Positions 20,701 to 63,008 are shown, counted from the first letter of the stretch. The stretch: DNA of 64,000 nt from Haliotis rubra (GCF_003918875.1 NW_025767077.1:868001-932000); one strand, 5' to 3'. Program-made: numbers and translations. The notes: generated by a model not told the origin, from the letters alone.

Positions 20701-22640
20701 TGTTGTAATAACTTGTTAAACTATATGTTGGGAAGATACAATCATATACAGTATAGATAAGGGTGTATTTTACGTTACGACGTTATAAGACCATATACAT
20801 AACTTGAGCACATCTATATGATCATCTGGTAAGAAGTATGCAACCTAGTTCCTTTTCCCGTCTCCTATATTTGCACTATGTCATTTGTTTAACTTGCGTG
20901 GCTCAAAATAATGACTGATGTATTTTACGTTACGTATTCCACGTTACGGTACTTTACGTTACTTATTCCACGTTACGGTATTTTACGTTACAGTTCCATA
21001 TATGGCTGTTTAACATCACATAATGTGCATACGCCACTAACAAATTTGATGACGCCATGAAAACATGTTACGTCATTCATGCCGATTTCAATGTGCGTGC
21101 TGCTCATGATCTGAAGCTCTGAGGGGTTAAATCATCGGTATGTAAGTACTGAACTTTCAACCTTATGATTCTTGTATATGTGTACAAGTCAAACTGTTAA
21201 ACGTTTATCAGTGCGTGTAATGAAGATAGTCTAATGAGATGTATCATGTATAATCATGCTCGGTAATGAAAAACACACTGAAATTACCATATGGCATTCG
21301 TAACGTAAAATACAGTTGCTGTAACGTAATATACAGTTAGATTGTACTGGCGTTAAATGAACACAAATTCCTATATAATCCAACGTTTGTTGCTAAACGT
21401 TTGTTAGAGATATGTCATTAATTTATTTGTATTTGCAGTTTTCTGAAAATGACAAAAACTGCAGCCGTTATGTTTGACAGTATCTTACGTTACAGTTGTA
21501 TTAAATGTTTATTACCTTACAGTGATACATTTAATAACCACTATGGAGCAAATAACTATATTTCCAGGTCGCATAACTCCTTGACGTTGTCTATAAATAT
21601 AGAAATGCCAGTGTAAGACATTCAATATTACTTTAGATGAACTAGAGAATCTATTTGGAAATTCTTGTATGAAGTTTCACCAATTGTCAATATAACGGTC
21701 AAATTCTATATAACATCTGATTACTTTTTTGATTTATTTGTGTTGAAATTAACTTTAGTTTGTTAAAGGATTTAGCAAACAATTAAAACAAGTTGTACTA
21801 TAGTTTTACATATATCTAACATTAAATTATTTTGTGTGACGTAAAATAAACTATTAAATACCTCAAATGCTAGTAACTGCCGTTTATTAACAAACCATAA
21901 GGCATTGTATCCTATCATTCTGTACATAGGTCAAGTAAATAATACTTGCCGTTGTCATATCGAAGAAATTGTGTTCAGATAAAAATATAATCCGATTTCC
22001 ATGATCACAAATGTACACGCTAACTGAGAATGAGTGAAATACCGGTTGCACTACACCAGTGACACCAGTTAAGCAGATCAGTAGTGGTACATGAAACACA
22101 AGGAAACTGAGAGTTATCTCCCTTCCGATAGTGCCGATCGTCGCGCAGCTACCGATCTCAGCAAAACGACGCCATTGTTGTTGCTTGTATACATCTGCTG
22201 TATCTCGCCATTGTTGGTCAATCTATCTTCGATTTTGACGATCGCTTGAGTTTTTTCCCCATACAGTCAAGCAGTTACGTTCAAGGTACCAATGAATCCG
22301 TGTTTTGTGACTTTGTTTCAGTCTGTTGTTAAATATGGCGACTGGCCGATGTGTATCTTTACTAACGATGTTTGCATTTTTGTTCTTGATGTCTGAAAAG
22401 ACCCCTGGCAGTGTTACGTTGATCAATATGCTTCCTTGGATACTGTAAACGTGTTCTTTCTGTTTTTAACATCTGATTTTAGAGGTTTTCTGAAAATGGC
22501 GAATCCTTTCATGTGTAACGAACATTCTCTCAGACCGTATTACACTCGAGGGAACAGCTTATATTACTTGTACTTAACTATGACTTTCAGTGTATTCTTT
22601 ATTTCAAGAAGTTTCATCACTTCTCCACAACACAGAGGTC

Positions 22641-23326
22641 ATGTTTCACCAGTTGCTTACCACTGCTGTCACTCCTGTCCCACGTCGAGTAGGTGTGCTA
22701 AGGTTTTAGAATAAAACTAAATTATTGAAACTGAAACTTGTATCAGCTCCTGTAGGGAACTAAAATGTATGTCACACAGTATTTGTTTTCACAACAGGTC
22801 AATTTCTGAGACAAAATGCCTCGTGTCCAAGTGTTCATGTTCCATAACCTTCTCCTGTATGGTCAATTGTTCCGGTATACATGCATTACACCCGACCCTA
22901 ACCCTCTCTAAATAATCCTAATGAATAAAATATATTGACCGTGGCAAGAAAATGGCTGTCGTGTCCCGTATGATTCATTCTTACCGTCTTTCCTTACCCA
23001 GCATACAACCTGCCCTTCATATCAGCCTTGTCTCATTATTTCTCTGTTCCCACTTCCCTCCCCACTAGCGTCCTTGTGTGTTCCACCCTGAACCCCTGTC
23101 CAACCTTCCCACCTCCTACATCTCTGTCCCCGACCCAGTCCCCGCCTCTGTTTCTGTCAACATCACCGGCCAAGTTATTGTGGCTGACACTGACTTTGTG
23201 GAGATAGATCTGGGCAGTGAGGCAGACACACAACCCCGCCCACCCCAGTCCTTCCTGAGAGCCTTGCTGTCCCGTTTCATCCGTCTAGTGAAAAGAGTCT
23301 TCACCTCCAACAAAAACGACGTATAA
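22641..23326 (+). CDS. Candidate small orphan protein, copy 4 (exons 22641-22688 + 23069-23326; 101 aa)
   Basis: Same exon lengths as copy 1 (48 + 258 nt), intact frame ending SNKNDV*. Confidence 0.5.
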
Positions 23327-24881
23327 AGTGCCATTTTGTGGGACATTTGTGGCAAATAAGTCACAAACAACACCTGTTATAATTTCCAGTTGTTTGTTAT
23401 TTCGTTAGTAAACTTTGTTTTGTTTTTTGTTCAAATTGTTGTTTGCTGCATTATTTTGTTATATGAAGTATTCGCTACTTATGTTACATAATGGATCACA
23501 GTCAAGCATAATCCAAAGCTTCCAGTGACATTACAGAACTCTGCAGCGCAATTTGTCTGTCGGGAAAACGTTTGTAGATCTTCACAGGTCTGTGACATCA
23601 TGGCGAAAACGTATAGTATATGCAATAGGTGCATCGTGTTCGCGCATACACATCCAGAATGGGATTTTGAAAATTTGTAGTGAACATAAAATACCGCCGT
23701 ATTCTTAATTTCTCATGCAATCAGATGTCCAAATACCTTTTTAATCATTGAAACCTTGAAATCTAGAGATCGAAGGAGTGGTGTTTTACACTGCTGTTAG
23801 TATTATTCCGGCCATATCAGGGTGTAGGAGGTACATCATGTTGTTGACATCCGGATTATATATGGCAGCCGTTCCTGCTTCATTCCGACGGGTTGTGATG
23901 ATTTAAGCATAAGGATTGCATGGTATTACCGGTATATTGCAAATATTCAAATGATACGTATGACAATATTTTTTTCTGAGATTGGTATATTGGGTAAAGA
24001 ACAAAGTTTTTGTGAGTGTCTTTATGGTTTAAATTAAAATCTACACAGACTTTCATTCACAACAAATATTTTCCTTCCTTATTCAATGACAAAACGGCTA
24101 ACTGTAATCCGATTAATTGTATTTATAAAATAAAATCCATGACTATGCAACCTAATTTTGAGATTGCTGCCATCAGAACCATAACATCTGTCTAGGGACT
24201 TATAATGTAGAAAATAAGATTGCCATGCACAATTAGTGTCACTCACTTTCACATACTTAAGTTCCCGATATATCGCAATACGTATCGCACTACATTGCAA
24301 GACAATTTATTTGCCAATACACAGCCCTATTAAGCATACAGGTTACAGTTATCACAAGTCCGTGATTTATAGCAGGTATGAAGTATTACAGTTTACACTC
24401 TAGTGAGGTATTTTGATACTCGCCGATTGTCATCGTGATCAGGGTGGTCCAAGGTCCAGTTGTTTGTGATCTGGTCAATGTGACGTAGGTTTGCATACAT
24501 TTACATTGCATGGGTCCAGTTCCAGTTGCTGTTAGTTCATATACTTTCAAGTTTCAAAGTTAATTATACAATTTATTTGTTTACAGTCCAGGAATATCAG
24601 TCGTGGGAGGGATACAGACAAGTACCAGGTTCTACATCCATGATGTGACAGACAATGCCCAGCGACTGATGTAGCCAGAACAGTTGACAGCCGGTATCGC
24701 GTCTTCTAACTCGAGACCTTGTACAAGAGTTTTCAGTTCAGAGAATACTACAATAAACTCGTTTCTGAAGTTCATGTCGTTGTTGTGTGATCCATGTGTA
24801 TTTTGCGTGTTCAGCAATTCTTACATTGTAAGTTCGTTGTGACATTTCACACCCTGTAATACGCACCGTTGGTAACGTGAT

Positions 24882-34054: not shown

Positions 34055-34297
34055 AGACCCGTTAAGAACCGGGGTAGAATTGGTCTTCAGTAACCCATGC
34101 TTGTCGTAAGAGGCGACTAACGGGATCAGGCTCGCTGGCTTGGTTGACACATGTCATCGTATCCCAATTTCGTAGAGCGATGCCCATGCTGTTGATTACT
34201 GGATTGTCTGGTTCAGACTCGATTATTTACAGATCGCCGCCATATAGCTGGAATATTGCTGAGTGTGGCGTAAAACTAAACTCACTGACTGACTGAG
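34055..34297 (+). mobile_element. SINE family C (Deu/Nin-domain-like core)
   Basis: cccatgcttgtcgtaagaggcgactaacggg core and gctggaatattgctgagtgtggcgtaaaac tail. Further copies near 29123, 35208, 41658, 47130, 48525, 49735, 50900, 57706, 59355, 62100. Confidence 0.8.
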
Positions 34298-36655: not shown

Positions 36656-36661
36656 TTTATT
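36656..36661 (-). terminator. Candidate polyadenylation signal AATAAA of the KRAB-like zinc-finger gene
   Basis: The minus strand reads TAA aaactg AATAAA immediately after the stop codon. Confidence 0.35.
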
Positions 36662-36667
36662 CAGTTT

Positions 36668-38145
36668 TTAACAAGGATGATGCTTCAGTTTGTGTGTGTG
36701 AAGGTTATCTGACCTAACAAATCTTTCCCCACACGTACTGCATTCATGGGGCTTGATGCCGCTGTGACATTTCATGTGTCTCAGGAGACTACCTGACTGT
36801 GTAAATCTTTTGCCACACCGCTCACACTTATATTTTTTGGTTCCACTGTGACGTGCCATATGTGTGTGGAGATCACACGATTGAGCAAATTTTCTGTCAC
36901 ACACACTGCACACAAAAGGCTTGTCACCACTGTGACACCTCATGTGTATCGTGAGAGCCATCGACTGGGCGAATCTTTTCCCACACACACTGCACAGATG
37001 AGGCTTGATTCCCCTATGGCCCCTGAGGTGTCTTTGCAGAGAGCTGGATTCTGTGAATGATCTACCACACTTTCTACATTTGTAAGGCTTTATTCCAGTG
37101 TGAATTCTTGTGTGGTTAAAAAGAGAATGTGATCGTGTGAATGTTTTCCCACACTGTTTGCACTCATGTGACTTTGTCTTGTGTTTCTTTGGTCTGCTTC
37201 TTTCCATGGATCCTATATCACTTTCTGTATCTTCTAAAGCAGCATGGCTTTCATTCTCATTGTCTTTCTCAAGGTGGCAAGTTACTTTGGATCCTATATC
37301 ACATTCTGTATCCTTTGTAGGTGTATCACGTTTACTCTTTTTGTGTTTCTTAAGTTTGCTAGTTGATACATATACTCCACATTCTGTATCTTCTGAAGCA
37401 GCATGACTTTCATTCTCATTGTCTTTCTCAAGGTGGTAAGTTACTTTGGATCCTATATCACATTCTGTATCCTTTGAAGGTGTATCACGTTTACTCTTTT
37501 TGTGTTTCTTAAGTTTGCTAGTTGATACATATCCTCCACATTCTGTTTCTTCTGAAGCAGCATGACTTTCATTCTCATTGTCTTTCTCAAGGTGGTAAGT
37601 TACTTTGGATCCTATATCACATTCTGTATCCTTTGAAGGTGTATCACGTTTACTCTTTTTGTGTTTCTTAAGTTTGCTAGTTGATACATATCCTCCACAT
37701 TCTGTTTCTTCTGAAGCAGCATGACTTTCATTCTCATTGTCTTTCTCAAGGTGGTAAGTTACTTTGGATCCTATATCACATTCTGTATCCTTTGAAGGTG
37801 TATCACGTTTACTCTTTTTGTGTTTCTTAAGTTTGCTAGTTAATACATATCCTCCACTTTCTGTATCTTCTAAAGCAATATCACTTTTACTCTTCTTGTG
37901 TTTCCTGTTATTCCTAGTAATAACTACAGATCCTCTGTCACATTCTTTTTCCTTTAAAACAGTATAGCTACTACTCTGTGTCGTGCTTTTAGTTTTCTTA
38001 GGAAAAGCTTGTAAGTTAAAGTTCTCATTGTCTGCACTTATCCTAAGTCTCACGTTTTCCCTTCCATGTATATCCTTTAGATTTATCCTTGACAACACGA
38101 CAGAGGTGACTGGACTCAAGTCACGACTGTCGTTTGGATACATGT
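36668..38145 (-). CDS. KRAB-like C2H2 zinc-finger protein (PRDM9-related), terminal coding exon 6: low-complexity repeats plus six C2H2 fingers
   Basis: 1478-nt open frame. Acceptor ttctttccag|AC (phase 1). Six CxxC-x12-HxxxH fingers with TGIKP/SGDKP-type linkers. Stop at 36668-36670. Confidence 0.93.
37208..37880 (-). repeat. Coding tandem repeat, 159 bp / 53 aa, about four units
   Basis: ggatcctatatcacattctgtatcc at 37289, 37448, 37607, 37766. Peptide DTECDIGSKVTYHLEKDNENESHAASEETECGGYVSTSKLKKHKKSKRDTPSK. Confidence 0.95.
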
Positions 38146-38609
38146 CTGGAAAGAAATTTGAAAAATACATAAAAATGTTGAAAATTAAATGTTTGACCTG
38201 AAACAGTATGATCGAAATATGACAAAAAAAATGTTATGTTCGTAACAATAATGGGGCAACAATCACTAATATACTGATGGTAAAAGGTTAGGCAACACCC
38301 ATATTTTGATAAATGATGACAAAAATAGGATTGAATGTAGCTGGATGGAGACTTTTGCATGCTTGGTTTTTGTATCTTACACAAAGGAAATAACAATGAA
38401 AATGGATTATGAGACAAAAGACAACATTTACTAACGTGATGGTGTTTATTGAGAGCAAAATAAAATGAAAGCGAAAAATACAACAAATGTCATCACTTTA
38501 CATGTTTGGAATCGATGTGAAGGAAAAATTTAAGTACGATTGGAATAGAGAGAAATGGTGCAAGAAACAAACAGTTGAATGTCTCTAGCACTGTTTCAGT
38601 GTACCGGAA

Positions 38610-39905
38610 GCAATCAGTATTCAGTGTATCCTCCTCCGAGTTTGATGACAGATGCACACCTATTGGCCATTCACCGAACCAACCTTTAAAGATTAAGGAT
38701 TATTGTGTTTCTGAGCTGATTCAAGTTGCCAACAGGATTGTCCAGTCTGGTCCTATTGCGGCCAATATCATCCCAAACATGTTCTATGGGGTTTATGTCT
38801 GGACTGACACTGGGCCATTCCAAAAATATAATTCCAAGTTGATTTTTGGCGTCCTGTACAATGCCTGCATGGTGAGGACGGGCATCGTCGTCTTGGAGGA
38901 TGAAGTGTCTGTTTGGATTGGCATGAATGTATGGCATAATTGTATTGTTAATGACGTCATTGAGGTACTTTGGACCTGTCATTGATCCCTGAACAACTTT
39001 GATGTCAACTTTATGGTCATACGTGAAACCAGCCCAAACCATTACAGATACCCCACCACCAGCAACAGTTGGCAGAACACATCTGGGGTTCAATCTGTCT
39101 CCATCAGTCCTTCTGACGCGCAAGCGACCATCAGCAACGTGAAGGTTGAATCGGGATTCGTCCGTCCATATGATACGACACTATCTTTGTAGGTTCCAAC
39201 GACGTCGTTGACAGGATCAGTCCAAACGAGCTTGCTTGTGGTAAGGGAGTAAACGAGGACTGACTGACTGAATTTGGTTTTACGCCGCTTTTAGCAATAT
39301 TCCAGCAACATCACGGCCATTAACGAGGACGCTTGAGGGGTCGTCTTGCCTGAAAACCACCGGAAATGAGACGTTTGTTCACCGTTTCCCGAGAAATGAT
39401 GATTCGGTGACTTGAAGGGATTTCTTCGAGCCAAGCCCAGTAGATAACGGTCTTCCCTGGCAGTGGTCTTCTTGGACGACCAGATCTGGGTCTATCATCA
39501 ACATCACCAGTGTTTCTGTACTTTGAAAGTAGCCTGCTCACCACACCGCAATGGAGGTTAACAGCAGCTCCAACTTGACGTAAGGACATACCAGCATGAC
39601 GCATGCCAACAATTTTTCACGTAACAGCTGACGTGACATGAGTTCGAGCTATTCTGATGTTTCTGAATATCACTTTCAATGTCACATTACTAGTGACAAA
39701 ACCATGTGACTGATGGTGGTTCCCCCATGATGCAAACGCATGGAAATCTCGTGCATGAACGTGAACATTGTGCATATTTCGTGGAGAGTCATTGATGGTG
39801 CTACATTTCAGTAACAATTGTTTGGCTAAAAAAACACACATTTCGTCAGTTATTTATCATACCACACCAATGACAGGGAAACTGTCACTTATTTACGTGC
39901 CAGGG
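38610..39905 (-). mobile_element. Decayed Tc1-family (DD34E) transposon with frameshifted transposase (~38686-39610)
   Basis: Paired-like HTH (GMSLRQVGAAVNL...RPRSGRPR), WTDESRF, VMVWAGF, QDDDARPH, WPSVSPDINPIEHVW; 34 residues between the second catalytic D and E. A truncated SINE A sits at ~39261-39320 with TSD aacgaggac. Confidence 0.92.
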
Positions 39906-41090
39906 CATTCGAAACTGTCACTTATTTACATAACAATGACAGGGAAACTGTCACTTATTTACATTACAATGACAGGGAAACTGTCACTTATTTACATAAC
40001 AATGACAGGGAAACTGTCACTTATTTACATAACAATGACAGGGAAACTGTCACTTATTTACATAACAATGACAGGGAAACTGTCACTTATTTATGATCAA
40101 TGACAGGGAAACTGTCACTTATTTACATAACATGACACAGGAAATGACTTATTTAGTACAATGACAGGAAACTGTCACTTATTTTAACAATGACAGGGAA
40201 ACTGTCACTTATTTACATAACAATGACAGGGAAACTGTCACTTATTTACATAACAATGACAGGGAAACTGTCACTTATTTACATAACAATGACAGGGAAA
40301 CTGTCACTTATTTACATATAACAATGACAGGGAAACTGTCACTTATTTATAACAATGACAGGGAAACTGTCAATGATCAATGGGAAACTGTCACTTATTT
40401 ACATAACAATGACAGGGAAACTCATTTATTTACGTACCAATGACAGGGAAACTGTCATTTATTTATGTACCAATGACAGGGAAACTGTCACTTATTTACA
40501 TAACAATGACAGGGAAACTGTCACTTATTTACATAACAATGACAGGGAAACTGTCACTTATTTACATAACAATGACAGGGAAACTGTCACTTATTTACAT
40601 AACAATGACAGGGAAACTGTCACTTATTTATGATCAATGACAGGGAAACTGTCACTTATTTACATAACAATGACAGGGAAACTGTCACTTATTTACGTAA
40701 CAATGACAGGGAAACTGTCACTTATTTACATAACAATGACAGGGAAACTGTCACTTATTTACATAACAATGACAGGGAAACTGTCACTTATTTACATAAC
40801 AATGACAGGGAAACTGTGTCATTTTATTTACATAACAATGACAGGAAACTGTCACTTATTTACATAACAATGACAGGGAAACTGTCACTTATTTATGATC
40901 AATGACAGGGAAACTGTCACTTATTTACATAACAATGACAGGGAAACTCATTTATTTACGTACCAATGACAGGGAAACTGTCATTTATTTATGTACCAAT
41001 GACAGGGAAACTGTCACTTATTTACATAACAATGACAGGGAAACTGTCACTTATTTACATAACAATGACAGGGAAACCGTCATTTATTTA
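39868..41090 (+). repeat. 33-bp minisatellite (~36 units) with an internal hairpin
   Basis: Unit acataacaatgacagggaaactgtcacttattt; tgacag-ggaaa-ctgtca is a perfect stem-loop. Confidence 0.97.
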
Positions 41091-41498
41091 TTTGTTTGGT
41101 TCTTTCTTACACTTTCAGAGCAGTTACGTGCATCATTTCATCCACCAGTCCACATGATCACTGATTCATTCCAGGGTCTAAACAAATGATCACAACGTAC
41201 TGTTTCCTACATTCTTACTTCACAGAACCCTCACATTGTCTGCAAGGACCCTAAAAACATTATAACTGGCAGTCCCCAGGACCCCATCATGGCCATGTTT
41301 GCGAGTTGAGGTAAAAACCCTGTCACGTCTCCTCTTTCAAGCTGTGATATAATAACATGGCCTGTATGATAGCACCTATTGGACAAACATCCTTTCATTT
41401 ATGTATCTTCATTTAATAATGTCTCTTTTTGACAAACTTACACAAGCAATCATCAGCCAGCAGACCAGCCTCCGTGTAGTTAGTCTGGGGTCTCTTAC

Positions 41499-41544
41499 GT
41501 TTCATCAGAGAAAGATTATCTTCACATGGATCTTTTTCAGTCAC
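41499..41544 (-). CDS. KRAB-like zinc-finger gene, coding exon 5 (VTEKDPCEDNLSLMK)
   Basis: catattcag|GTG ... AAA C|gtaaga. Phase 0 in and phase 1 out, exactly bridging exon 4 and the terminal exon. Confidence 0.7.
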
Positions 41545-41657
41545 CTGAATATGATTCACACAAACAGCTATTTACTCAAATATAACATATATATTTCATA
41601 CACAACTGAATCATACACAACTGAACCTCACCTGAACACTTCGGGAATATATCAGAT

Positions 41658-42060
41658 TAGTTGGTTGTTGTTTAACGCCACACTCAGCTGCATCCAAGCT
41701 ATATAGAGGTGGTTTGTAAACAGTTGAGTCTGGACCAGACACTACAGTGATCAACATCATGAGCGAGTTAGTGAGTTTGGTTTTACGCCGCTTGTAGCAA
41801 ATTTCCAGCAATATCACGAGGGGGGACACCAGAAATGGACTTCACACATTGTGCACATGGGGGGAATCGAACCTGCATCTTTGGCTTGACAAGCGAACGC
41901 TTTAACCACTAGGCTACCCCACAGCCCCCGATCAACATCATGAGCATTGATATGATGACGTGTCAACCAAGTCAGCGAGCCTGACCACCCGATCCAATTA
42001 GTCGCCTCTTACAACAAGCATGGGTTACTGAAGATCAATTCTAACCCGTATCTCCATGGA
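41658..42060 (-). mobile_element. SINE family C with a nested family-A SINE (~41765-41928)
   Basis: The inner element is flanked by the direct repeat gatcaacatcatgagc. Confidence 0.85.
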
Positions 42061-42382
42061 TCTATTAGATCAGAAAGGTCATACAAGATCAAAGAAGTAA
42101 AGCTGTTTATACTAGGAAGGTGTTTGTGGTACATGCAAAAACTCAATCAAATCAGCTGTCATTTTTTTCCTAAATCATGCTCATGGTGTCTCATGTAGTT
42201 TTGCTAAGGTTTAAAATAGTCATGATTCATCTTAAGTTTGGTTTCTTAGTAAACTTTGAGTTGTATATACATGTCTTTCAGTCATGATTCACAGTTTCAG
42301 CTGACATTCCTAGACTAAAAAGGATTCATTTCGAGATGTTTCCCATAATCATGATAATAATAATAATAATAATAATAATAAT

Positions 42383-43390
42383 GTGATTCTTAAAGAAAAT
42401 ATCAATATAAAATGTCGACTCTGTAATGAATTTACAGCGACTGTCCAACACCTTGTCAGTGGATGCCCTTTTTTGGCACAAACAGCATATCTTAAACGAC
42501 ATGATGCCATGTCTGTGGCTTTGACTCCAAGGTCCATCCATGGTACGACCCTGAACATGTCCAGGGCGTCATGGAAAATGATGCTTTCAAACTTCTGTGG
42601 AATAGGCCCATATACAGCCTCAGAAGAATTCCTGCCAACAAACCTGATCTTGTCCTTTTTGATAAAGCTAATGAATTTATTTATATCATTGAATTTTCTG
42701 TCCCTTTTGACAGCAATGTGATTGGCAAGATTCAGGAAAAGCATACTAAGTATGCGGACCTCGCCTTTGAATGTCGCGCTTGCATCCCAAGTACACTGTC
42801 GTCAGGCTCCCCATTGTCAGTGTAGGAAAGAAAGCCCGTCCCAACGTCCGAGACGGGTGAATTTTGTGGAGGACGGGTTAAAAATAAATCTAGTCCGTCC
42901 TCATGTCAGGTCAGTTTTAGCAAACAAATGACATATATATAATGATAATAACCTTTTTGAATATTTTTATGTTTTATTTATATTTGGAGGACAGGCTAGA
43001 TTTTGGCAGGACTGGTAAAAAATTTGACCAGCCAGTCCTGTGGACAGGCTAGATTTTCTACATCTTTCCTACACTGCCATTGTTCTCGGTGCCCTAGGTT
43101 TGGTACCTCCTGATCTCTTGGCGCAGATCAGGAGTGTGCCCGGGTTCTCCACCGGGAGCACAGCCCTTCTGACACTCTGGGTAATGCAGAAGGCTGCAGT
43201 GTTGGGGAGCCTTCATATTCTCCGTAAAGTTCTTGGTGTGTTCGACTAGGCAGTGTTTCCTGGGAGAAGTCCCATTTGCTGTCTGGGCTGCGTGTAGAGG
43301 GCCCTGAGCTGATGATGAGCCTTACCAGCCTGACTGTGCCAGGATTACCCGAACCCTCTCTGCTGCATACTATCTTTAATCTGTAAAACA
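42383..43390 (+). mobile_element. 5'-truncated RLE non-LTR retrotransposon (R4/Dong-like) inserted at a (TAA)n tract
   Basis: CCHC knuckle CRLCNEFTATVQHLVSGC, RHD, KPDLV, IIEFSVP, PIVLGALG, QKAAVLGSLHILRKVL* (stop at 43247-43249). (TAA)n at ~42355-42382 and taataat at ~43391. Confidence 0.88.
42818..43076. mobile_element. MITE with 14-bp perfect TIR and 7-bp TSD (P-superfamily-like), nested in the retrotransposon
   Basis: cagtgtaggaaaga ... tctttcctacactg. TSD ccattgt at 42811-42817 and 43077-43083. Empty site in the sister copy near 32862. Confidence 0.85.
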
Positions 43391-43501
43391 TAATAATAGC
43401 ATATTTGTAAAGCGCTTATATCCATGCTTTTGCATGCTCAAAGCACACAAATAAAAATGCAAGTAAGGAAAAGAGTTACAATCAAGGATTGTGGGTGTTA
43501 C

Positions 43502-43587
43502 CTTGGATGTTGAGTGCATGTCATTCTTCTTCAGTCTCAGTCTGGTTGTACAGTCTGGTGCCTCATACGGCACAAGAGGCTTCGATG
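43502..43587 (-). CDS. KRAB-like zinc-finger gene, coding exon 4 (ASKPLVPYEAPDCTTRLRLKKNDMHSTSK)
   Basis: aaatttcag|CA ... AAG|gtaaca. Phase 1 in, phase 0 out, open frame. Confidence 0.75.
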
Positions 43588-43699
43588 CTGAAATTTATAA
43601 CAAGGAATTATGAGCATCACCATTACCAGTGGAATACTGTACACATCAGAACCTGGAGTGCATGAGTCAACATTTAGTCACATCAGCAATGTTTCTGCC

Positions 43700-44258
43700 A
43701 TATACAGACAGCAGGATGTTGGACAGATATACAGACAGCAGGATGTGGGACAGATATACAGACAGCAGGATGTGGGACAGATATATAGACAGCAGGATGT
43801 GGGACAGATATATAGACAGCAGGATGTGGGACAGATATACAGACAGCAGGATGTGGGACAGATATACAGACAGCAGGATGTGGGACAGATATATAGACAG
43901 CAGGATGTGGGACAGATATATAGACAGCAGGATGTGGGACAGATATATAGACAGCAGGATGTGGGACAGATATACAGACAGCAGGATGTTGGACAGATAT
44001 ATAGACAGCAGGATGTGGGACAGATATATAGACAGCAGGATGTGGGACAGGATGGGACAGATATAGACAGCAGGGATGTGGGACAGATATATAGACAGCA
44101 GGATGTGGGACAGATATATAGACAGCAGGATGTGGGACAGATATATAGACAGCAGGATGTGGGACAGATATATAGACAGCAGGATGTGGGACAGATATAT
44201 AGACAGCAGGATGTGGGACAGATATATAGACAGCAGGATGTGGGACAGATATATAGAT
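43700..44258 (+). repeat. 27-bp minisatellite (~20 units), intronic
   Basis: Unit acagatata(t/c)agacagcaggatgtggg. Confidence 0.97.
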
Positions 44259-44759
44259 AGTGGGTGTTGTTTGGTGTTGGTTTCTTGAGTAAATATTCCA
44301 GTGATCTTGGCCTGTAAACTGTCATGTATAATGTAAGGGACACCGATATTATGACAGGGCTCCAGATAAGGGCCATACCAGCATATGTACAGATAAACAA
44401 TATGCACAATACGGTAGGAAATGATTTAGAAAACGTAGCAGATATGCACCACAGCAATGGTATACTGTCTGAGAATCACAGACGTATTTATCAGAAAAAA
44501 TAGTATTGTTTTATTTTTCATTGACCTGTTTACACAAGACTAGCAATGTTGTGGTGCAAATATAAATGAAACAAGAATATTTGGGGCGAGGTGTCTAAGG
44601 TGTCGGGCTAGTGATTATTATATGGTCTCTGGGCTGACCTACCCCATGTCCCCCTTGTGACCAGTGAACACCTTCTAATCAACATTGCTTGAAAGTTTAG
44701 TAATACATGTACCTGTGTTGCCAAGATAGTAGCAGACATGTATACAGTACGGCTGAAGG

Positions 44760-45099
44760 GTACCCCAGGTACGTTTCTGTATACAGAAATGTACCCTAGC
44801 CAAAATCAGAATACAGAAACGTACCCTTGGAAGATTCCATTCTGTATTGTGGAGTTTTCTTCATTGGAACGGTCATACTATTGTATTAGATGCATTTGAT
44901 TGCGTTATATAAGAGCATACACAGTATAACGAATATTTCCTGGTGCACAACGTACACCACTCGCAATCAACTGAACGGGAACAACTACATACGGTTTCGG
45001 TTTTGGGTTGCTCGTCCGTCGTTTAGGGTACTGGGTACGTTTCTGTAGTTTGTCTTTGTTTAGGGTACATGTCTGTATACAGAAACGTACCTGGGGTAC
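44760..45099. mobile_element. MITE-like element with a 39-bp near-perfect inverted repeat
   Basis: gtaccccaggtacgtttctgtatacagaaatgtacccta (44760-44798) versus 45061-45099, one mismatch. Confidence 0.65.
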
Positions 45100-45247
45100 A
45101 TATCTGTAGTACCTGTGCCGACAACGACCACTTATGGCCACGTACCGACGACCCTTCAAGCAGCGTAAATAAAACACGATAATAAAACTGAAACAAACAG
45201 CGTTAAACACGGAATTGGAAAGTCGTCCCTATCCTATACAGATTTAC

Positions 45248-45406
45248 CTCGAGCACTCCTTCTAACAGTAGTATGATGTTCCGAAATTTCGTCAGCATCA
45301 ATCGAAACAGAACTATTATCGTCGTCCTTCATCACTGGCTTCATCGTTTTCCTTTTCTTTTCCACTCTAGGAGTCTTCATGAAATCTGGCTTCATTACCG
45401 GCATAC
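45248..45406 (-). CDS. KRAB-like zinc-finger gene, coding exon 3 (GMPVMKPDFMKTPRVEKKRK...RRSAR)
   Basis: cctgttgaag|GT ... CGA G|gtaaat; 159 nt, phase 1 to phase 1. KPDFM corresponds to the PxFM motif that follows the KRAB-A box in PRDM9/SSX. Confidence 0.85.
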
Positions 45407-45962
45407 CTTCAACAGGAAACATAACCAGTTGCATTCAGTCTCTTAGTTATCTTGGTCTTTAGCGGTTTTTGATTGGGATACACGTTTTTAAAAAATTAAC
45501 GAAGGGAGGTAACTTTAAAAACAATACCGACACAAATTGCAGCCCTCTTGAAAGTTAATGCCACGACACTAAAATGTCGGCGTTTCACTTAATTTGTCCT
45601 TTTAAGTCTTGAAGACTACAATAATAACTCCAATATATTACTGGATACTTTATCATGTCTTTGGGTGAAGTGTTGGATAAATTGACAATATAGTTTCAGA
45701 GGTGTGACGATACAGAAATTTCACGATACGATACCATACGATTCGATGCAATATCACGATATATCTTTAGTTTTTTTCTTGAAAAAAAGTATATTTTGAC
45801 ATCAAGTAACTATGTAAATTTTGACATAAACGTCAATTTTCTAGTGAAAATTAACAATTTTAAAGTCAACGAAACATATCACGACACGAAAAAAAATATC
45901 AATATATACTTCCGTTCAAAAGTTTAGACTCACTTAAAACACTCACTGTATATGTTATGTTA

Positions 45963-46008
45963 TGTGTGTGTGCGTGCGCGCGTGTGTGTGTGTGTGTGTG
46001 GGGGGGGG
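45963..46008. repeat. (TG)n/(CG)n microsatellite plus a G run
   Basis: tgtgtgtgtgcgtgcgcgcgtgtgtgtg...ggggggggg. Confidence 0.8.
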
Positions 46009-46599
46009 AATGTAACTTCGAAGATTGATTTCTCCACTAACTTGGGGCAACCAAATGCAATCCTTATGCATATGAATCGCATGAGCATCATGCATCAAAT
46101 AGGTGAAAAGCATGTGCAAATATCGTGCATGTGAACAGCTGCATTTTGGTGTTAAGGTTTGTTAAGATTTCGCCAATTTTAACTGATTTTTATCATTTAC
46201 TAAACTCATGACGATAATTTTTTCAACGTTACGAATTTGTTTTACAATACATCAGTTCATATGTAAACAGTACCTTTAAACAGTACGGAATATTTTGCAA
46301 AGTTTAGTTTCGAACAGTTGCCTGCAGTAAGTTGCTATATTTACACTAGTGAGTGTAAACGTTTAATGGGAAATATATACATTTAACGTCAGTATCAGGA
46401 TTATCGATCAATACAACGTCACAGCTCTATTAATTAGGTCACAACGTTTAAACTGCACGTGCTCACTTGCACAAGGCGATCACAGCTCGAAAGTCAACCT
46501 GACTCCTTTTCAACATTGACTTATGATGGTCAGTGCTATCTTTGCCTTGAGAAACGACGGCCATGAACGTCACTTATTTCTACAAAATCAGTGAATTAC

Positions 46600-46777
46600 C
46601 TAAAAGCGCCATCATTTCGTAGCTCTTCCTCATGTTTCTCAGTCTCAGCTTCTCATACTCAGACAATGCTGCCATTTGATGTTCAGTGAAGTACTTGTCT
46701 ATGTCCCCCCACACGTGGCTCTCCATTTCTCTGAAATTAGCCACCGGCTCACCAGACCCTTTGAAAGTGGGTATTGC
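46600..46777 (-). CDS. KRAB-like zinc-finger gene, coding exon 2: ancestral (PRDM9/SSX-type) KRAB domain
   Basis: WGDIDKYFTEHQMAALSEYEKLRLRNMRKSYEMMALLG aligns with PRDM9 KRAB (FxDIxxYFTxEEWxxxxxWEKxRYRNxKRNYxxLxxxG). Acceptor tttttcag|GCA; phase-1 donor inside the terminal Gly codon. Confidence 0.9.
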
Positions 46778-47129
46778 CTGAAAAATATAAGTGCGGTAAT
46801 ACAACAACAACATAACTAACTTTTTTCAGTTTTGCAATTTTTTATCTAGCATGACTACAAAGCTTATCGCATATAATAATGACGTTTTGTCTATAGGGTA
46901 CAGCTTGACCTTGTATAACGCCTCTTTAGACCAAACGTACATTCTGAGGAAATGCTAAAATAAAATAATAAAATAGGCCCTATAGACATGCCGCCTTTAG
47001 TAAGAGACATAAATTTACTCATGGACACTGAAACCTTTTTTTCTTTCACTTTTTATTTCAGCACTTCGGGGTTACATGTGATACAGAAGAAGTATATTCA
47101 GGAACAAAGTTTCTGTTACATTTGATATA

Positions 47130-47362
47130 CCCCGTGAAGATCCGGGTTAGAATATTGATCTTCAGCAACCCACGCTTGTTGTAAGAGGCGACAGGATCAC
47201 TGACTTGGTTGACACATGTCATCGGTTCCCAATTGCACAGATCGATGCCCATGCTGTTGATCACTGGATTGTCTGGATCAGACTCGATTATTTACAGACC
47301 GCCGCCATATAGCTGGAATATTGCTGAGTGCGGCGTAAAACATTTAAACTCACTCACTCACT
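47130..47362 (+). mobile_element. SINE family C
   Basis: cccgtgaagatccgggttagaat...gcggcgtaaaacatttaaactcactcactcact. Confidence 0.85.
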
Positions 47363-47667
47363 GTTACATATACATAGCTCCCCTTTTTAGGCCCCGAAAT
47401 TTTACACCCCACCCCACCCCCCCCAACATATTAATACCTTGGTGCATTTGCCTGGTACATTAATAAAACTTGTCAAGAAACTAACTAACTACGCACGCAC
47501 GCACGAACAGGCACTGCGGACTTTAATCCCACACCACATAAAACTGACACAGTAATTAAGTTATAACTGAAATTCATTTCAGAGTCTTACTGAATCCCTC
47601 ACTATCACATACGTGATTAGTTCACACACCCATGACAACAATATTAATAAAATCTAACTGTACTTAC

Positions 47668-47682
47668 TTGAGTATTAGCCAT
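47668..47682 (-). CDS. KRAB-like zinc-finger gene, coding exon 1 (MANTQ; exon begins at 47699)
   Basis: tttttatttcag|aattctccgtaacaaggATGGCTAATACTCAA|gtaagt. Strong Kozak context, consensus donor, phase 0 matches exon 2. Confidence 0.7.
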
Positions 47683-48524: not shown

Positions 48525-48766
48525 AGAGTGAGTGAGTTATGTTTTACGCCGCACTCAGCAATATTCCAGCTATATGGCGGCGGTTTGTATAGATAATCGA
48601 ATCTGGACAAGACAATCCAGTGATCAACAGCATGAACATCGATCTACGCAACTGGGATACGATGACATATGTCAACCAAGTCAGCGAGCCTGACCACCCG
48701 ATCACATTAGTCGTCTCGACAAGCGTGGGTTACAGGAGATCAATTCTAACCCGGATCCTAACGGGT
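48525..48766 (-). mobile_element. SINE family C
   Basis: gagtgagtgagtt...ttttacgccgcactcagcaatattccagc...caattctaacccggatc. Confidence 0.85.
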
Positions 48767-50899: not shown

Positions 50900-51147
50900 G
50901 TTTGGTTGGTTGGTTTGTTGTTTAACACCGCACTCAGCAATATTCCAACTGTATGGCGGCGGTCTGTAAATAATAAAGTCTGGACCAAACAATCCAGTGA
51001 TTAACATCATGAGCATCGATCTACGCAGTTGGGATACGATGACATGTGTCAACCAAGTCAGCGAGCCTGTACCCCGATCCCGTTAGTTGCCTCTTACGAC
51101 AAGCTTGTGCTGCTGAATACCAATTCTAACCCGAATATTCACCGGTC
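50900..51147 (-). mobile_element. SINE family C
   Basis: tttaacaccgcactcagcaatattcc...gcctcttacgacaagc. Confidence 0.85.
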
Positions 51148-57705: not shown

Positions 57706-57940
57706 GACCCGTGAAGATCCGGGTTAGAATTGGTCTTCAGCAACCCATGCTTGTCGTAAGAGGCTGGTAACACTAACAGGATCGGGTTGTCAGGCTCGCT
57801 GACTTGGTTGACACATGTCATCATATCCCAATTGCTTAGATGCTGTTGATCACTGGATCGTCTGGTCCAGACTCGATTATTTACAGGTCGCTGCCATATA
57901 ACTGGAATATTGTTGAGTGCGGGTTTAAACAACAAACAAA
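57706..57940 (+). mobile_element. SINE family C (preceded by a tRNA-like head from ~57659)
   Basis: gacccgtgaagatccgggttagaattggtcttcagcaacccatgcttgtcgtaagaggc. Confidence 0.85.
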
Positions 57941-59265: not shown

Positions 59266-59974
59266 GCTCATTTCAGCTACAAGTGCATGAATCTTGTAAA
59301 CGTTAATTCTAATATATTTCTGACTTCAGTAAAATGACCAATTTTTCATTAAATTTGACCTGTGAATATCCAGATTAAAATTGATCTCAAGCATCCCATG
59401 TTTGTCACAAGAGTCAACTAACAGAATTTGAAGGTCAGACTAGCTGACTTGGTCATCATATCCCAGTTGTGTAGATCGATGCTCATGGTGTCATTCACTG
59501 GATTGCCTGGTCCAGACTCGATTTTACAGACAGTTGCCATATAGCTGGAATATTGCTGAGTGTAAAGTGAAACAATAAACAAACATGGTGTTGGTCATTT
59601 GGGTTGTTGTGAGGTGCGTGGGACAGGTGACCCTACTTCAGTTCTATACCCTCCAAGGGTTGGTGGGGTAGGCCAGTGGTTAAAGCATTCACTTGTCACG
59701 CAGAAGGCCCGGGTTCGATTACCCACATGGGTACAATGTGCCAAACTCATTTCTGGTGTCCCCTACCATGATAATTGATGTTGCTAATGACACCCACTCA
59801 CTCATACACTGTGCCCTGCAAGGTCAGTAACCCACATGGTGTATGTGACAATGAGCAAGACATGGCCGAGACAAGGAAAAAACAACTGAAACAGATCAGG
59901 CAGTTAAAACAGCATGTAAGGTCAATATAGTGATACACATAAGGAAGAGAGTTTTATGGATGTCAACTTCTATA

Positions 59975-60325: not shown

Positions 60326-61276
60326 GTATATACTTACTCCTTCATCCTGGTGCAGTGGGGTAGCCTAGTGGTTAAAGCGTTTGCTCTTCATGCTGAAGAC
60401 TCGGGTTCGGTTCCCGACATGGGAACAATGTCTGAAACCCATTTCTGGTGTCCCCACCGTGACATTCCTGGAATGTTGCTAAAAACAGTGTAAAACCATA
60501 CTCACTCACAAACAGTCCTTCATCTCTCTTCCTTATAATAGACATGCAAACGTCACTTTAGAAATAATGGTAAAAGTTGTCTCAACTTTTCACTTATCTA
60601 TATTTGCCTATTATTAAGGAGGAATTTCTATACATTCATGGACTTTTCATTCAGTACAGGCTTGGAGTAAGGTTAAGGTCACATGTGGATAGTTATTTTG
60701 GATGTTTTGATGTTTTGTTATCTGTATGGGATGTCAGCTCAGAAGTATCGCAGTATGTTAATAATAACATTAACTAATTTGTATGTGTATTGATTACAGT
60801 GACCTCTATCACCTGCAGGTTGAGAGGTATCAGGTGTGAACGAACAGCTAACACCACATGCAGCCTAAATCAGTTGTCTTCTCGGGATGTTTTGATCTAT
60901 ATTTAAGAAGTAGGTTATCATTCTTCCGGAAGAGGAAATTTCTTTTTCAAGGCATGATCATAAGAGTAGCTGTCGTGATCAATGACTTGAGAAATCATTA
61001 CGGAAATGAAATTTGGTTCGTAATAGCCACTTGTTAGGTAATATGACACCACTCCAGTCAATTTAGTGCTCAGCATGGGTTAGGCTGATCCCTTAGGTGT
61101 TTAAACGAATTTTCTGCATTAGTATCTTACAGGGTGATTACTAGGGTGATTTAGGGTGCTACAGTAGAAACTGTATCGCTTACAATCGTATGACGTCAAA
61201 ATATGATGCATGCAGTGCACAGAATTCGAAAACCTTTTGATTAGCTGTTTTACACATATATTTTACGGACTTTCAA

Positions 61277-61562: not shown

Positions 61563-63008
61563 ACTTTCACTGCTTTATTTAAACTATTTTATACATTGAA
61601 TTGTTTGCACACTCAGCATAATTAACCAGTTTATAGCAGTTTTAGGCTTGTCAGAATTTGTTTCAGTGATTTTTAAAATCTAAGTCGAAAGGTGATGCCG
61701 TTTTGTTTACATGTCATATAGTCGGTAACGAGCTTATCGATCTTCAAAATATAATAAAATGATGATATTTTGTACATTTAACATGGCGGTAAGATAAATA
61801 TGTTGTAAACTTCTCTCTCGGGTAATACGGTCTGATGTACGCCTTTTTGTAGCAGTGTCATCAGACCGTATGACCCCTGAGAGAAGCATACAACTGATAG
61901 TATTTGATACAGCATCAACATTTACTGACACATCAATATTCAGTGACATCTGACTGTTTTTGTGTGAGGAAATGACTCAGTGATCGCAGTTCCGTTGATT
62001 ATGTCGACAATAAGCTGCATTTTTGCATCTAATCTGCAACACAAATCTCCATTAATCAATAATTTTTTAGTTGCTTACATCTAAATGCCCACAAGAAAGA
62101 TTGGTTGTTTTAACTGAGCAATGTTACAACTATATGGCAGCTGTCTGTAAATAACAGCATCTGAGCTGGACAATCCAGTGATCAACAGCATGAGCATCAA
62201 TCTAAGCAATTTGGATATGATGACATGTGTCAACCAAGTCAGTTAGCTGGACCACCCAATCCCCTCAGTCGCATCTTGCGACAAGCATGGGTTGGTGAAG
62301 ATCAGTTCTAACCCCGATCTTCAATAACAAGTCTTGTTGTTATATATATGCTCATCAAAAGAATTTCAGGATTGGACCTTGTTAGCATGATGAGTATATA
62401 CGCAAAGGCTCCAAAATATCTGGAGCCATGTTGATCTCTATAAGTATAATACTCAAAAGTATAGGACCAGTGATAAAGTAGAGATAATGTGTCATGACGT
62501 TAGTTGATGTTAATACACCATAACATTCTTGTGATGGTTTCTACATATACAGATTTATTGATTCCAACATGTTGACTGACTAGGTCCGCTAAATAGACCA
62601 ACATTATTTATTCATTGCATATGTAAGTAAACAAGTTGAAAAAGAAGAAAGGCAATTATTTCCATTAAACATGTTATCTTATTCCGGCTATTGATGATAC
62701 AGATCATAGAGACCATTAATACTTAACTACATTCCGATAAATTGATAAAATATCGGAGAAGTCCTTTGGTGCAAAAAGGGAAAAAAAAGTCTGAAAAAAT
62801 CAACATATTTCCTGTCACTGGTAAGTGGTGAAATATTTATGCATCGATAACTTACAAAAATATGATTCTGTATGCAGTTTAGAAGCGACCCATGAATAAC
62901 GAAAAAACTTTGTGTATTGTGTGTATAAACTGAAACTTTATTTCGTTACAACAGTTTCTGTACAAAATTACCACCGACACAATTTCCATGTTGATATTCA
63001 ATAATATA

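What the first reader, a model, noticed from the sequence alone, without database searches (positions are those of the whole stretch)
36668..47682. KRAB-zinc-finger architecture in an apparent invertebrate: PRDM9-derived gene with KRAB, SSXRD-like motif and six fingers but no PR/SET
Seen: six coding exons (47682-47668, 46777-46600, 45406-45248, 43587-43502, 41544-41499, 38145-36668) with GT-AG sites and phases 0,1,1,0,1 join into one 1962-nt frame (653 aa). Exons 2-3 encode a PRDM9/SSX-type KRAB with the phase-1 intron in the terminal Gly and a following PxFM motif. Exons 4-5 give TTRLRLKK...VTEKDPCEDN, reminiscent of SSXRD (RLRERK...ISDPEEDD). The model then splices directly to the finger exon; I found no zinc knuckle or PR/SET sequence in between. 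Established: canonical KRAB-ZFPs are regarded as a lobe-finned-vertebrate/tetrapod expansion derived from the PRDM9 KRAB, whereas invertebrate KRAB is known mainly within full PRDM9. Inference: an independent origin of a SET-less KRAB-ZF factor, possibly one of a lineage-specific family acting on the abundant transposons. TRIM28-type repression should not be assumed, because ancestral KRABs bind TRIM28 poorly.
Basis: partly seen in the sequence, partly recalled or inferred. Interest (0 to 1): 0.88.

Follow-up and report, generated by a model that had tools for sequence, protein, structure and literature searches.

The report
Abalone PRDM9 copy that lost SET
This abalone (Haliotis rubra) gene is a duplicate of the meiotic gene PRDM9 that lost exactly the four exons for its enzyme part and kept its ancestral KRAB domain and six DNA-binding zinc fingers, so it repeats in a mollusc the step thought to have created vertebrate KRAB zinc-finger genes.

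Summary
The gene is real. The window is Haliotis rubra, and the model matches NCBI's "zinc finger protein 436-like" (672 aa) except at exon 5. The 19 residues left out are the only true remnant of SSXRD.

Pfam finds only the fingers. More sensitive tests place the N-terminus with the ancestral PRDM9/SSX-type KRAB:
- phmmer against 1.84 billion proteins
- hhalign (97% probability, E 5.5e-11)
- a family profile that hits solved KRAB structures
- Foldseek, whose top 11 hits are all SSX/PRDM7/PRDM9

Compared with a canonical Haliotis PRDM9, intron positions and phases are the same. Exactly the zinc-knuckle and PR/SET exons are missing, and the frame is kept. A profile scan finds no SET remnant in the window or in the syntenic H. 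asinina ortholog, which has an intact 782-aa ORF.

KRAB (dN/dS 0.16) and the fingers (0.24) are under purifying selection. The SSXRD remnant is decaying (about 1.2).

The fingers differ from one another but are conserved between the two species, and the gene is single-copy. This gives no support for a transposon arms-race family.

This is a new variant of a known kind (a truncated PRDM9 paralog) and is moderately interesting.

The parts
47668..47682 (-). Coding exon 1 (MANTQ, 15 nt), followed by a phase-0 intron
   Evidence: H. asinina has the same 15-nt first exon.
46600..46777 (-). Coding exon 2. It encodes the ancestral KRAB-A box (aa 20-65; KRAB core 46735-46600) and ends in phase 1 inside the Gly65 codon.
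   Evidence: phmmer hits to mollusc PRDM9 N-termini. hhalign 97.1% probability, E 5.5e-11 against mammalian PRDM9/7. Canonical H. rufescens PRDM9 has the same phase-1 junction in G65. dN/dS 0.16.
45248..45406 (-). Coding exon 3. It holds the end of the KRAB-related domain (MPVMKPDFM, 45406-45372) and a basic/acidic linker. The canonical SDSDEEWxP motif has degenerated.
   Evidence: Alignment; junction phases.
43502..43587 (-). Coding exon 4 (linker), followed by a phase-0 intron as in canonical PRDM9
41442..41544 (-). Positions 41517-41442 encode the degenerate SSXRD remnant LSLMKRKRPQTNYTEAGLLADDCL(Y). The exon ends in phase 1 at the position where canonical PRDM9 has DDDHFL|YCEEC.
   Evidence: The SSXRD HMM scores only 4.2 bits (7 of 2000 shuffles score as high) and dN/dS is 1.19.
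38146..41441 (-). Intron 5, the site where the four zinc-knuckle and PR/SET exons are missing. It contains a Tc1/mariner DDE transposase remnant (38686-39604) and a 33-nt minisatellite (39868-41090), and no SET-like sequence.
   Evidence: Six-frame HMM scan negative, with a positive control. tblastn negative. Pfam DDE_3 hit. TRF. The orthologous intron in H. asinina is only 1173 nt.
36668..38145 (-). Terminal coding exon (phase-1 acceptor, includes the stop codon): pre-repeat region, coding minisatellite and finger array
   Evidence: H. asinina has a continuous ORF here.
37219..37904 (-). Coding minisatellite: 159-nt units (53 aa, each made of two 78-nt sub-repeats) x 4.1 at 97% identity. It encodes alternating basic (KKHKKSK) and acidic (DTEC) stretches. 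H. asinina has roughly a dozen 26-aa units instead.
   Evidence: TRF; translations.
36671..37168 (-). Six tandem C2H2 zinc fingers (aa 507-672). They differ from one another and are conserved between species.
   Evidence: Pfam zf-C2H2 / zf-H2C2_2. Mean 56% nucleotide identity between fingers. dN/dS 0.24, with contact residues identical in fingers 3-5.
36656..36661 (-). AATAAA polyadenylation signal, starting 7 nt after the stop codon
   Evidence: Flank printed.

Best explanation
This is a functional, single-copy paralog of PRDM9 found in abalones.

Shown:
- A duplicate of the Haliotis PRDM9 gene lost exactly the four exons encoding the zinc knuckle and the PR/SET methyltransferase domain. The phase-1 donor of the SSXRD exon now splices to the phase-1 acceptor of the terminal exon, so the reading frame is kept.
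- The protein has an N-terminal ancestral-type KRAB (aKRAB) under purifying selection and a decaying SSXRD remnant.
- It has a fast-changing basic/acidic repeat spacer encoded by a minisatellite.
- It has six distinct C2H2 fingers under purifying selection.

Inferred mechanism:
- The finger array binds a fixed DNA motif.
- The aKRAB acts as a protein-docking module for whatever partners the PRDM9 KRAB uses. In mouse these are CXXC1 and others, by yeast two-hybrid.
- The protein would therefore bring such partners to defined sites without depositing H3K4me3/H3K36me3 itself.
- It is unlikely to work through a modern KRAB-TRIM28 interface, because it has the ancestral gap plus a basic pair where modern KRABs have VMLE.
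For: Identity:
- The corrected CDS equals NCBI XP_046579424.1 from Haliotis rubra.

KRAB homology:
- phmmer of aa 1-185 against 1.84 billion representatives gave 58 hits. Of these, 26 carry the PR domain and 13 match Pfam KRAB. The top hits are mollusc PRDM9-like proteins at E 1e-8 to 1e-14.
- hhalign against 54 mammalian PRDM9/7 N-termini gave probability 97.1%, E 5.5e-11, across the KRAB box.
- The family profile hits solved KRABs: ZNF568 (7w5q, 8e-6) and ZNF93 (7z36, 3e-5).
- The AlphaFold model has pLDDT of 94 or more over about residues 31-70. Its 11 best Foldseek hits in Swiss-Prot are all SSX, PRDM7 or PRDM9.

Exon loss:
- Canonical H. rufescens PRDM9 has junction phases 1,1,0,1 | 0,0,1 | 1. 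The SET-less gene has 1,1,0,1 straight into the terminal exon, at the same residues (G65; DDxxL|Y).

No SET:
- The six-frame knuckle+SET HMM finds nothing in the 64-kb window or the 28.5-kb H. asinina locus (best E 0.1-1). It recovers all four exons in the control locus (E 1e-7 to 3e-26). tblastn is also negative.

Functionality:
- The syntenic H. asinina ortholog has an intact 782-aa ORF with the same architecture.
- dN/dS is 0.16 for KRAB and 0.24 for the fingers, at dS 0.25-0.48.

Origin:
- The KRAB tree places the SET-less pair as sister to the canonical Haliotis PRDM9s (94/75 support) on a long stem.
- Canonical PRDM9 with SET coexists in Haliotis.

Mechanism background:
- KRAB partners of mouse PRDM9: PMC5688218.
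- The ancestral KRAB lacks TRIM28-type repression: PMC8835667, PMC3912051.
Against: - No transcript data could be examined. The exon 5-to-exon 6 junction rests on Gnomon models in two species, conserved phase and ORF continuity.
- Pfam KRAB and SSXRD models do not hit the protein even at E<=10. They also miss the canonical Haliotis, lamprey and crinoid PRDM9 N-termini.
- Foldseek TM-scores are below 0.5, and the search against solved PDB structures was empty.
- Support for the sister-group node is moderate and rests on 98 alignment columns, so an older duplication is not excluded.
- No ortholog was seen in the annotated H. rufescens or H. cracherodii proteomes, and their genomes could not be searched.
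- The partner-docking mechanism is extrapolated from mouse PRDM9 and is untested here.
Confidence: 0.8

Rival explanations
1. TE-silencing KZFP analog. The gene would belong to a lineage-specific, expanding family whose fingers track transposons and whose KRAB recruits a silencing complex.
For: The architecture (KRAB + fingers, no SET) mirrors coelacanth and tetrapod KZFPs. The locus is rich in transposon remnants. Coelacanth ancestral-type KRAB-ZNFs do bind their own TRIM28 (PMC6745500).
Against: The gene is single-copy. tblastn finds no paralog in the window, and database searches return only the H. rubra and H. asinina orthologs. The fingers differ from one another (56% nucleotide identity) and are under purifying selection, with identical contact residues in three of the six. 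The KRAB has the PRDM9-type basic pair, not the acidic residue seen in coelacanth KZNFs.
Confidence: 0.08
2. Non-functional relic. A PRDM9 duplicate crippled by an internal deletion, still annotated as a gene but drifting neutrally.
For: The enzymatic core is gone. The SSXRD remnant evolves at dN/dS of about 1.2 and the linkers at 0.57-0.69. The spacer is an unstable minisatellite. NCBI splits the H. asinina gene into two models.
Against: Intact ORFs of 672 and 782 aa persist in two species separated by dS 0.25-0.48. KRAB dN/dS is 0.16 and finger dN/dS is 0.24. All splice sites and phases are conserved, and a poly(A) signal follows the stop.
Confidence: 0.07
3. Annotation or assembly artefact. 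The KRAB exons and the finger exon would belong to different transcripts, or SET exons would have been lost in a collapsed repeat, so the true gene is a normal PRDM9.
For: Introns 3 and 5 contain minisatellites (43700-44257, 39868-41090) where assemblies can collapse. No RNA evidence was available.
Against: The window has no N runs. The chromosome-level H. asinina assembly shows the same exon order, with a 1.17-kb intron 5 and no SET. The junction is phase-compatible in both species. Canonical PRDM9 genes sit at other loci.
Confidence: 0.05

Closest known systems
Canonical PRDM9 of Haliotis and other molluscs (e.g. H. rufescens XP_048236929.1, Pecten maximus XP_033725916.1)
   Same: Homologous N-terminal ancestral KRAB. 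Identical intron positions and phases up to the SSXRD exon. Terminal exon carries the C2H2 array and is entered in phase 1. The HMRCH-type finger ending is shared.
   Different: Lacks the zinc knuckle and PR/SET (four exons). SSXRD is degenerate. The fingers differ from one another and are conserved, whereas the canonical array has near-identical tandem fingers that vary at contact residues. It has a novel coding minisatellite spacer.
Truncated PRDM9 paralogs described in cnidarians and vertebrates (bioRxiv 10.64898/2026.09.07.749791; Baker et al. 2017, PMC5519329)
   Same: Birth-and-death of PRDM9 duplicates by loss of whole exons.
   Different: The cnidarian survey defines truncated homologs as retaining at least the SET domain (SZ, XSZ, kXSZ and so on). 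This gene is the reciprocal class, K-(x)-Z without S, which a SET-anchored search cannot find.
Coelacanth ancestral-type KRAB zinc-finger proteins and tetrapod KZFPs
   Same: KRAB + tandem C2H2 fingers with no SSXRD function and no PR/SET. Thought to derive from PRDM9.
   Different: Independent origin within a gastropod. Single-copy rather than a family of hundreds. Multi-exon structure inherited from PRDM9. PRDM9-type basic residues at KRAB-A positions 33-34. TRIM28 binding unknown and not expected.
SSX family (mammals)
   Same: PRDM9/7-derived, SET-less, keeps an ancestral KRAB. Best structural matches of the model.
   Different: SSX proteins keep a functional SSXRD and have no fingers. This gene keeps the fingers and is losing SSXRD.
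Lytechinus pictus 'zinc finger protein 708-like isoform X8' (XP_063957197.1, P0055)
   Same: An invertebrate protein with an N-terminal KRAB (Pfam 20.7 bits), ten fingers and no SET.
   Different: Echinoderm, on a separate long branch in the KRAB tree, with no SSXRD remnant seen in the alignment. Its locus was not on record, so it may be a splice isoform of a larger gene.

Membership tests
KRAB-related / ancestral KRAB (PRDM9-SSX type) | Scores above threshold with the curated Pfam KRAB model PF01352 | tested here: not met
   No hit even at E<=10. The same model also misses canonical Haliotis, lamprey and crinoid PRDM9 N-termini, so this shows the model's limited reach rather than absence of the domain.
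KRAB-related / ancestral KRAB (PRDM9-SSX type) | Statistically significant homology to bona fide PRDM9/SSX KRAB domains | tested here: met
   phmmer E 6e-14 to 1e-8 to mollusc PRDM9s, with direct hits to SSX and KZFP proteins that do match Pfam KRAB. hhalign probability 97.1%, E 5.5e-11. The family profile hits the ZNF568 and ZNF93 KRAB structures.
KRAB-related / ancestral KRAB (PRDM9-SSX type) | Ancestral KRAB-A signature: DI motif, and a one-residue gap with a basic pair where modern KRABs have VMLE (PMC8835667) | tested here: met
   The sequence reads GDIDKYF...LRNM-RKSYEMM. HMMER opens the one-residue gap against ZNF568 and ZNF93 at exactly this point.
KRAB-related / ancestral KRAB (PRDM9-SSX type) | KRAB-A exon ends in phase 1 in the conserved Gly, followed by PxFM | tested here: met
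   G65 is split in phase 1 in H. rubra, H. asinina and canonical H. rufescens PRDM9, and KPDFM follows.
KRAB-related / ancestral KRAB (PRDM9-SSX type) | Two-helix L-shaped fold | tested here: inconclusive
   AlphaFold2 gives pLDDT of 94 or more over about residues 31-70, with helices 37-42 and 45-63. The top 11 Foldseek hits in Swiss-Prot are SSX, PRDM7 or PRDM9, but TM is below 0.5. There was no significant hit to solved structures.
SSXRD | Matches Pfam SSXRD PF09514 or an SSXRD profile | tested here: not met
   No Pfam hit. A custom SSXRD HMM scores 4.2 bits at aa 161-171 in H. rubra (7 of 2000 shuffles score as high) and gives no signal in H. asinina.
SSXRD | Positional homology: the exon between the linker and the zinc knuckle, with the same phases | tested here: met
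   Exon 5 has phase 0 in and phase 1 out, and ends at DDCL|Y compared with DDDHFL|Y in canonical PRDM9. RPQTNY aligns with RPDTNY.
SSXRD | Sequence constraint | tested here: not met
   48% amino-acid identity between the two abalone species, dN/dS 1.19 over 27 codons.
PRDM9 (complete, recombination-directing) | PR/SET methyltransferase domain with catalytic tyrosines | tested here: not met
   No SET or PRDM2_PR hit in the protein. tblastn and the six-frame HMM find nothing in the window or the ortholog locus, and the positive control works.
PRDM9 (complete, recombination-directing) | Zinc knuckle preceding SET | tested here: not met
   The alignment ends at ...DDCLY with no CEEC...C.xHG motif. 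The HMM scan is negative.
PRDM9 (complete, recombination-directing) | Minisatellite-like finger array evolving fast at DNA-contact residues | tested here: not met
   Fingers share 56% nucleotide identity, against up to 99% in canonical H. rufescens PRDM9. Array dN/dS is 0.24 and contact residues are identical in fingers 3-5.
Canonical KZFP (TRIM28-recruiting KRAB zinc-finger protein) | Modern KRAB-A with VMLE, and TRIM28 binding | tested here: not met
   The VMLE motif is absent, replaced by the gap plus RK. TRIM28 binding itself cannot be tested with these tools.
Canonical KZFP (TRIM28-recruiting KRAB zinc-finger protein) | Member of a large, clustered, rapidly duplicating gene family | tested here: not met
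   No second copy in the 64-kb window. Only one H. rubra and one H. asinina protein of this type were found across three database searches. Whole genomes could not be scanned.

The most novel reading that the evidence does not exclude
Loss of SET from PRDM9 duplicates while keeping the ancestral KRAB and the fingers may be a recurrent route to new DNA-binding factors across animals. Candidates seen here are abalone, a sea-urchin isoform and a sawshark KRAB-ZF. SET-anchored surveys cannot see this class. On this reading the abalone protein still docks the meiotic partners of PRDM9's KRAB. It would then either mark fixed chromosomal sites for the recombination machinery or compete with canonical PRDM9 for those partners, acting as a natural separation-of-function allele of PRDM9.
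Probability: 0.15. Interest if true: 0.8.

Novelty: new variant of a known kind. Interest (0 to 1): 0.55.

Why it matters
The accepted account is that KRAB zinc-finger proteins arose once, in the ancestor of coelacanths and tetrapods, from a PRDM9-like gene that lost its SET domain. Outside vertebrates the KRAB is known only as part of PRDM9.

This abalone gene shows the same step occurring independently, and the evidence is unusually clean. The intron phases explain how four exons could drop out without breaking the frame. A coexisting canonical parent gene is available for comparison, and selection is still acting on KRAB and the fingers.

The gene offers a natural test of what an ancestral KRAB does when separated from the methyltransferase. 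It also shows that PRDM9 surveys anchored on SET, and Pfam's KRAB model, systematically miss such derivatives in invertebrates.

The interest is limited because it is one gene in two species, with no expression or binding data and no family expansion.

Tried and rejected
- Pfam scans of the single exons and of the whole protein for KRAB, SSXRD and SET found only fingers. This is uninformative for KRAB, because bona fide invertebrate PRDM9s fail too.
- phmmer of aa 1-185 against PDB sequences returned only noise. The family profile was needed.
- The word-indexed homolog search with the N-terminal region found only the query itself.
- Foldseek against solved PDB structures gave no significant hit.
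- The H. rubra canonical PRDM9 locus (L002) ends at a contig edge after the second exon, so H. rufescens was used for the exon comparison instead.
- The Lytechinus SET-less protein has no locus on record, so its gene structure could not be checked.
- The start of the terminal exon (MYPNDSRDLS...) looks like a decayed copy of the lone post-SET finger of PRDM9 (IYPCDSCYLS...). BLASTP gives E 0.17 for the single pair. This is suggestive only and was not used as evidence.
- Orthologs in other Haliotis genomes could not be looked for, because no tool here searches eukaryotic genome assemblies.

Full report
**Observation.**
The word-indexed protein search identified the source. The terminal exon is 100% identical to NCBI XP_046579424.1, "zinc finger protein 436-like [Haliotis rubra]", 672 aa (P0001). 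The exon runs on to 41442 and is followed by GTAAGT. With exon 5 set to 41544-41442, the spliced CDS reproduces P0001 exactly. tblastn finds no second copy in the window.

**Ortholog.**
The only close relative in the databases is a 345-aa H. asinina protein named "PRDM9-like" (P0002).
- Its locus (L001) is collinear with the window, flanks included.
- It has the same exons, phases and 103-nt exon 5.
- Its terminal exon is one continuous ORF that includes the same six fingers.
- NCBI split the gene into two models inside the repeats. Read through, it encodes an intact 782-aa protein of the same architecture.

**Is the N-terminus a KRAB?**
Pfam finds only C2H2 fingers, and no KRAB, SSXRD or SET even at E<=10. 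Pfam also fails on the N-termini of canonical Haliotis, lamprey and crinoid PRDM9, so this result is not informative. More sensitive tests agree with one another.
- phmmer of aa 1-185 against 1.84 billion representatives gave 58 hits at E<=1e-3.
  - Twenty-six hits carry the PR domain, 20 carry SET and 13 match Pfam KRAB.
  - The best full-length hits are mollusc PRDM9-like proteins: Pecten, Solemya, Mytilus, Liolophura and Saccostrea.
  - There are also direct hits to SSX proteins and to coelacanth, squamate and sawshark KRAB-ZFs.
- hhalign of the two abalone sequences against 54 mammalian PRDM9/7 N-termini gives probability 97.1%, E 5.5e-11, over the KRAB box.
- A profile of the family (alignment A2) hits the solved KRAB domains of ZNF568 (7w5q, 8e-6) and ZNF93 (7z36, 3e-5). 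HMMER opens a one-residue gap exactly where modern KRABs have VMLE and the abalone has M-RK. This is the ancestral-KRAB signature defined in PMC8835667.
- An AlphaFold2 model has pLDDT of 94 or more over about residues 31-70. Its 11 best Foldseek matches among 550,129 Swiss-Prot models are all SSX, PRDM7 or PRDM9, but TM-scores are below 0.5. The search against solved structures was empty.

**SSXRD.**
Canonical Haliotis reads YPLRQRPDTNYMMMEGPDDDHFLY, and the SET-less gene reads LSLMKRKRPQTNYTEAGLLADDCLY. The match is weak.
- A custom SSXRD HMM gives 4.2 bits in H. rubra at the right place (7 of 2000 shuffles score as high) and nothing in H. asinina.
- The segment evolves at dN/dS of about 1.2.

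I read it as a decaying remnant, identified by its position rather than by its sequence.

**How SET was lost.**
Haliotis has canonical PRDM9 with zinc knuckle, PR/SET and fingers, with at least two copies each in H. cracherodii and H. rufescens. I mapped the H. rufescens gene (P0175) onto its locus. Its junction phases are:
- 1, inside G65
- 1
- 0
- 1, at DDDHFL|YCEEC
- 0, 0 and 1, within the knuckle and SET exons
- 1, into the terminal finger exon

The SET-less gene has 1 (G65), 1, 0, 1 (DDCL|Y) and then goes directly into its terminal exon in phase 1. So exactly four exons are missing, and the flanking phases match, which preserves the frame.

A profile HMM of knuckle+SET built from 139 sequences was run on six-frame translations.
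- It recovers the four exons in the control locus (E 1e-7 to 3e-26).
- It finds nothing better than E 0.1-1 in the whole 64-kb window or in the 28.5-kb H. asinina locus.
- tblastn with four mollusc PRDM9s agrees.

Intron 5 is 3.3 kb in H. rubra and holds a Tc1/mariner remnant and a 33-nt minisatellite. In H. asinina it is 1.17 kb.

**Age and selection.**
A maximum-likelihood tree of the KRAB region (98 columns) places the two SET-less genes together (100/100). They are sister to the canonical Haliotis PRDM9s (94/75), on a long stem of 0.91 against 0.23. This suggests a duplication within the abalone lineage followed by accelerated change, but support is moderate.

| Region | dN/dS, H. rubra vs H. 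asinina (Nei-Gojobori) |
|---|---|
| KRAB | 0.16 |
| Fingers | 0.24 |
| Linker | 0.57 |
| Start of terminal exon | 0.69 |
| SSXRD remnant | 1.19 |

dS across these regions is 0.21-0.48.

Fingers 3-5 have identical contact residues. The six fingers share on average only 56% nucleotide identity. The canonical array consists of near-identical tandem fingers, up to 99% identical, that differ at contact positions. The spacer is a coding minisatellite with different unit number and structure in the two species.

**Interpretation.**
The structural claim is well supported. This is a PRDM9-derived gene without SET that keeps the KRAB and the fingers, sits in a mollusc, and is maintained by selection.

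The gene is single-copy and its fingers are conserved.

The mechanism I favour is inferred and untested here.
- A fixed-motif DNA-binding protein uses the ancestral KRAB as a docking surface.
- In mouse PRDM9 the KRAB mediates all mapped yeast two-hybrid interactions, notably with CXXC1 (PMC5688218).
- The human PRDM9 KRAB neither represses transcription nor binds TRIM28 (PMC3912051, PMC6745500, PMC8835667).

**Novelty.**
- Full-text searches found no report of SET-less KRAB-finger derivatives of PRDM9 in invertebrates.
- The recent cnidarian survey defines truncated paralogs as containing at least SET, so it cannot detect this class.
- The abalone gene is not unique in kind. A sea-urchin protein (Lytechinus pictus XP_063957197.1) also has a Pfam-positive KRAB plus ten fingers and no SET. 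I could not examine its locus.

I file this as a new variant of a known kind (a truncated PRDM9 paralog), of moderate interest.

Noticed in passing
window 2138-23546 (units near 4509-5489, 10281-11745, 16737-17612, 22567-23546): A stretch that occurs once in the H. asinina locus fetched here (L001 20851-22278, downstream of the gene) matches four tandem copies in the H. rubra window at 74-79% identity. A segment of roughly 6 kb appears to have been amplified in H. rubra.
   Followed up: partly
window 38686-39604 (-), inside intron 5: Tc1/mariner-type transposase remnant (Pfam DDE_3 8.9e-9; weak HTH_Tnp_Tc3_2) on the same strand as the gene. The orthologous H. asinina intron is only 1.17 kb, too short to hold it together with the 1.2-kb minisatellite.
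   Followed up: partly
window 39868-41090 and 43700-44257: Two intronic minisatellites: 33-nt unit x 37.8 copies in intron 5, and 27-nt unit x 20.3 copies in intron 3.
   Followed up: no
window 34097-34290, 47174-47362, 48526-48717, 50920-51104, 57707-57922, 59398-59573, 62113-62288; also 41855-41923 and 60360-60418: A dispersed repeat of about 190 nt, shared with the H. asinina locus at 75-92% identity. A second element of about 150 nt has copies that Rfam scores as tRNA (36.5 and 29.4 bits), so it is probably a tRNA-derived SINE.
   Followed up: no
L001 10001-19672 (H. asinina CM074526.1): NCBI annotates the ortholog as two genes (345 aa 'PRDM9-like' plus a 267-aa product), with an artificial break inside the coding repeats. 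The terminal exon is one uninterrupted ORF, and the joined gene encodes 782 aa.
   Followed up: yes
L003 (H. rufescens JALGQA010000034.1) and proteins P0071, P0177, P0175, P0176: Canonical abalone PRDM9 is present in at least two copies per species on the same contig. Its fingers are near-identical tandem units that differ mainly at DNA-contact positions, the hallmark linked to recombination-directing PRDM9 in vertebrates.
   Followed up: partly
P0028 (Pristiophorus japonicus, 'zinc finger protein 419-like', 844 aa): A sawshark protein with two KRAB-like boxes (one matches Pfam KRAB at 23 bits), ten fingers and no SET. A KRAB-ZF in a cartilaginous fish would predate the accepted coelacanth-tetrapod origin of KZFPs.
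   Followed up: no
P0055 (Lytechinus pictus XP_063957197.1, 598 aa): A sea-urchin 'ZNF708-like isoform X8' with an N-terminal KRAB (Pfam 20.7 bits, cutoff 20.4), ten fingers and no SET. It may be an independent SET-less PRDM9 derivative or a splice isoform. Its locus was not on record.
   Followed up: partly
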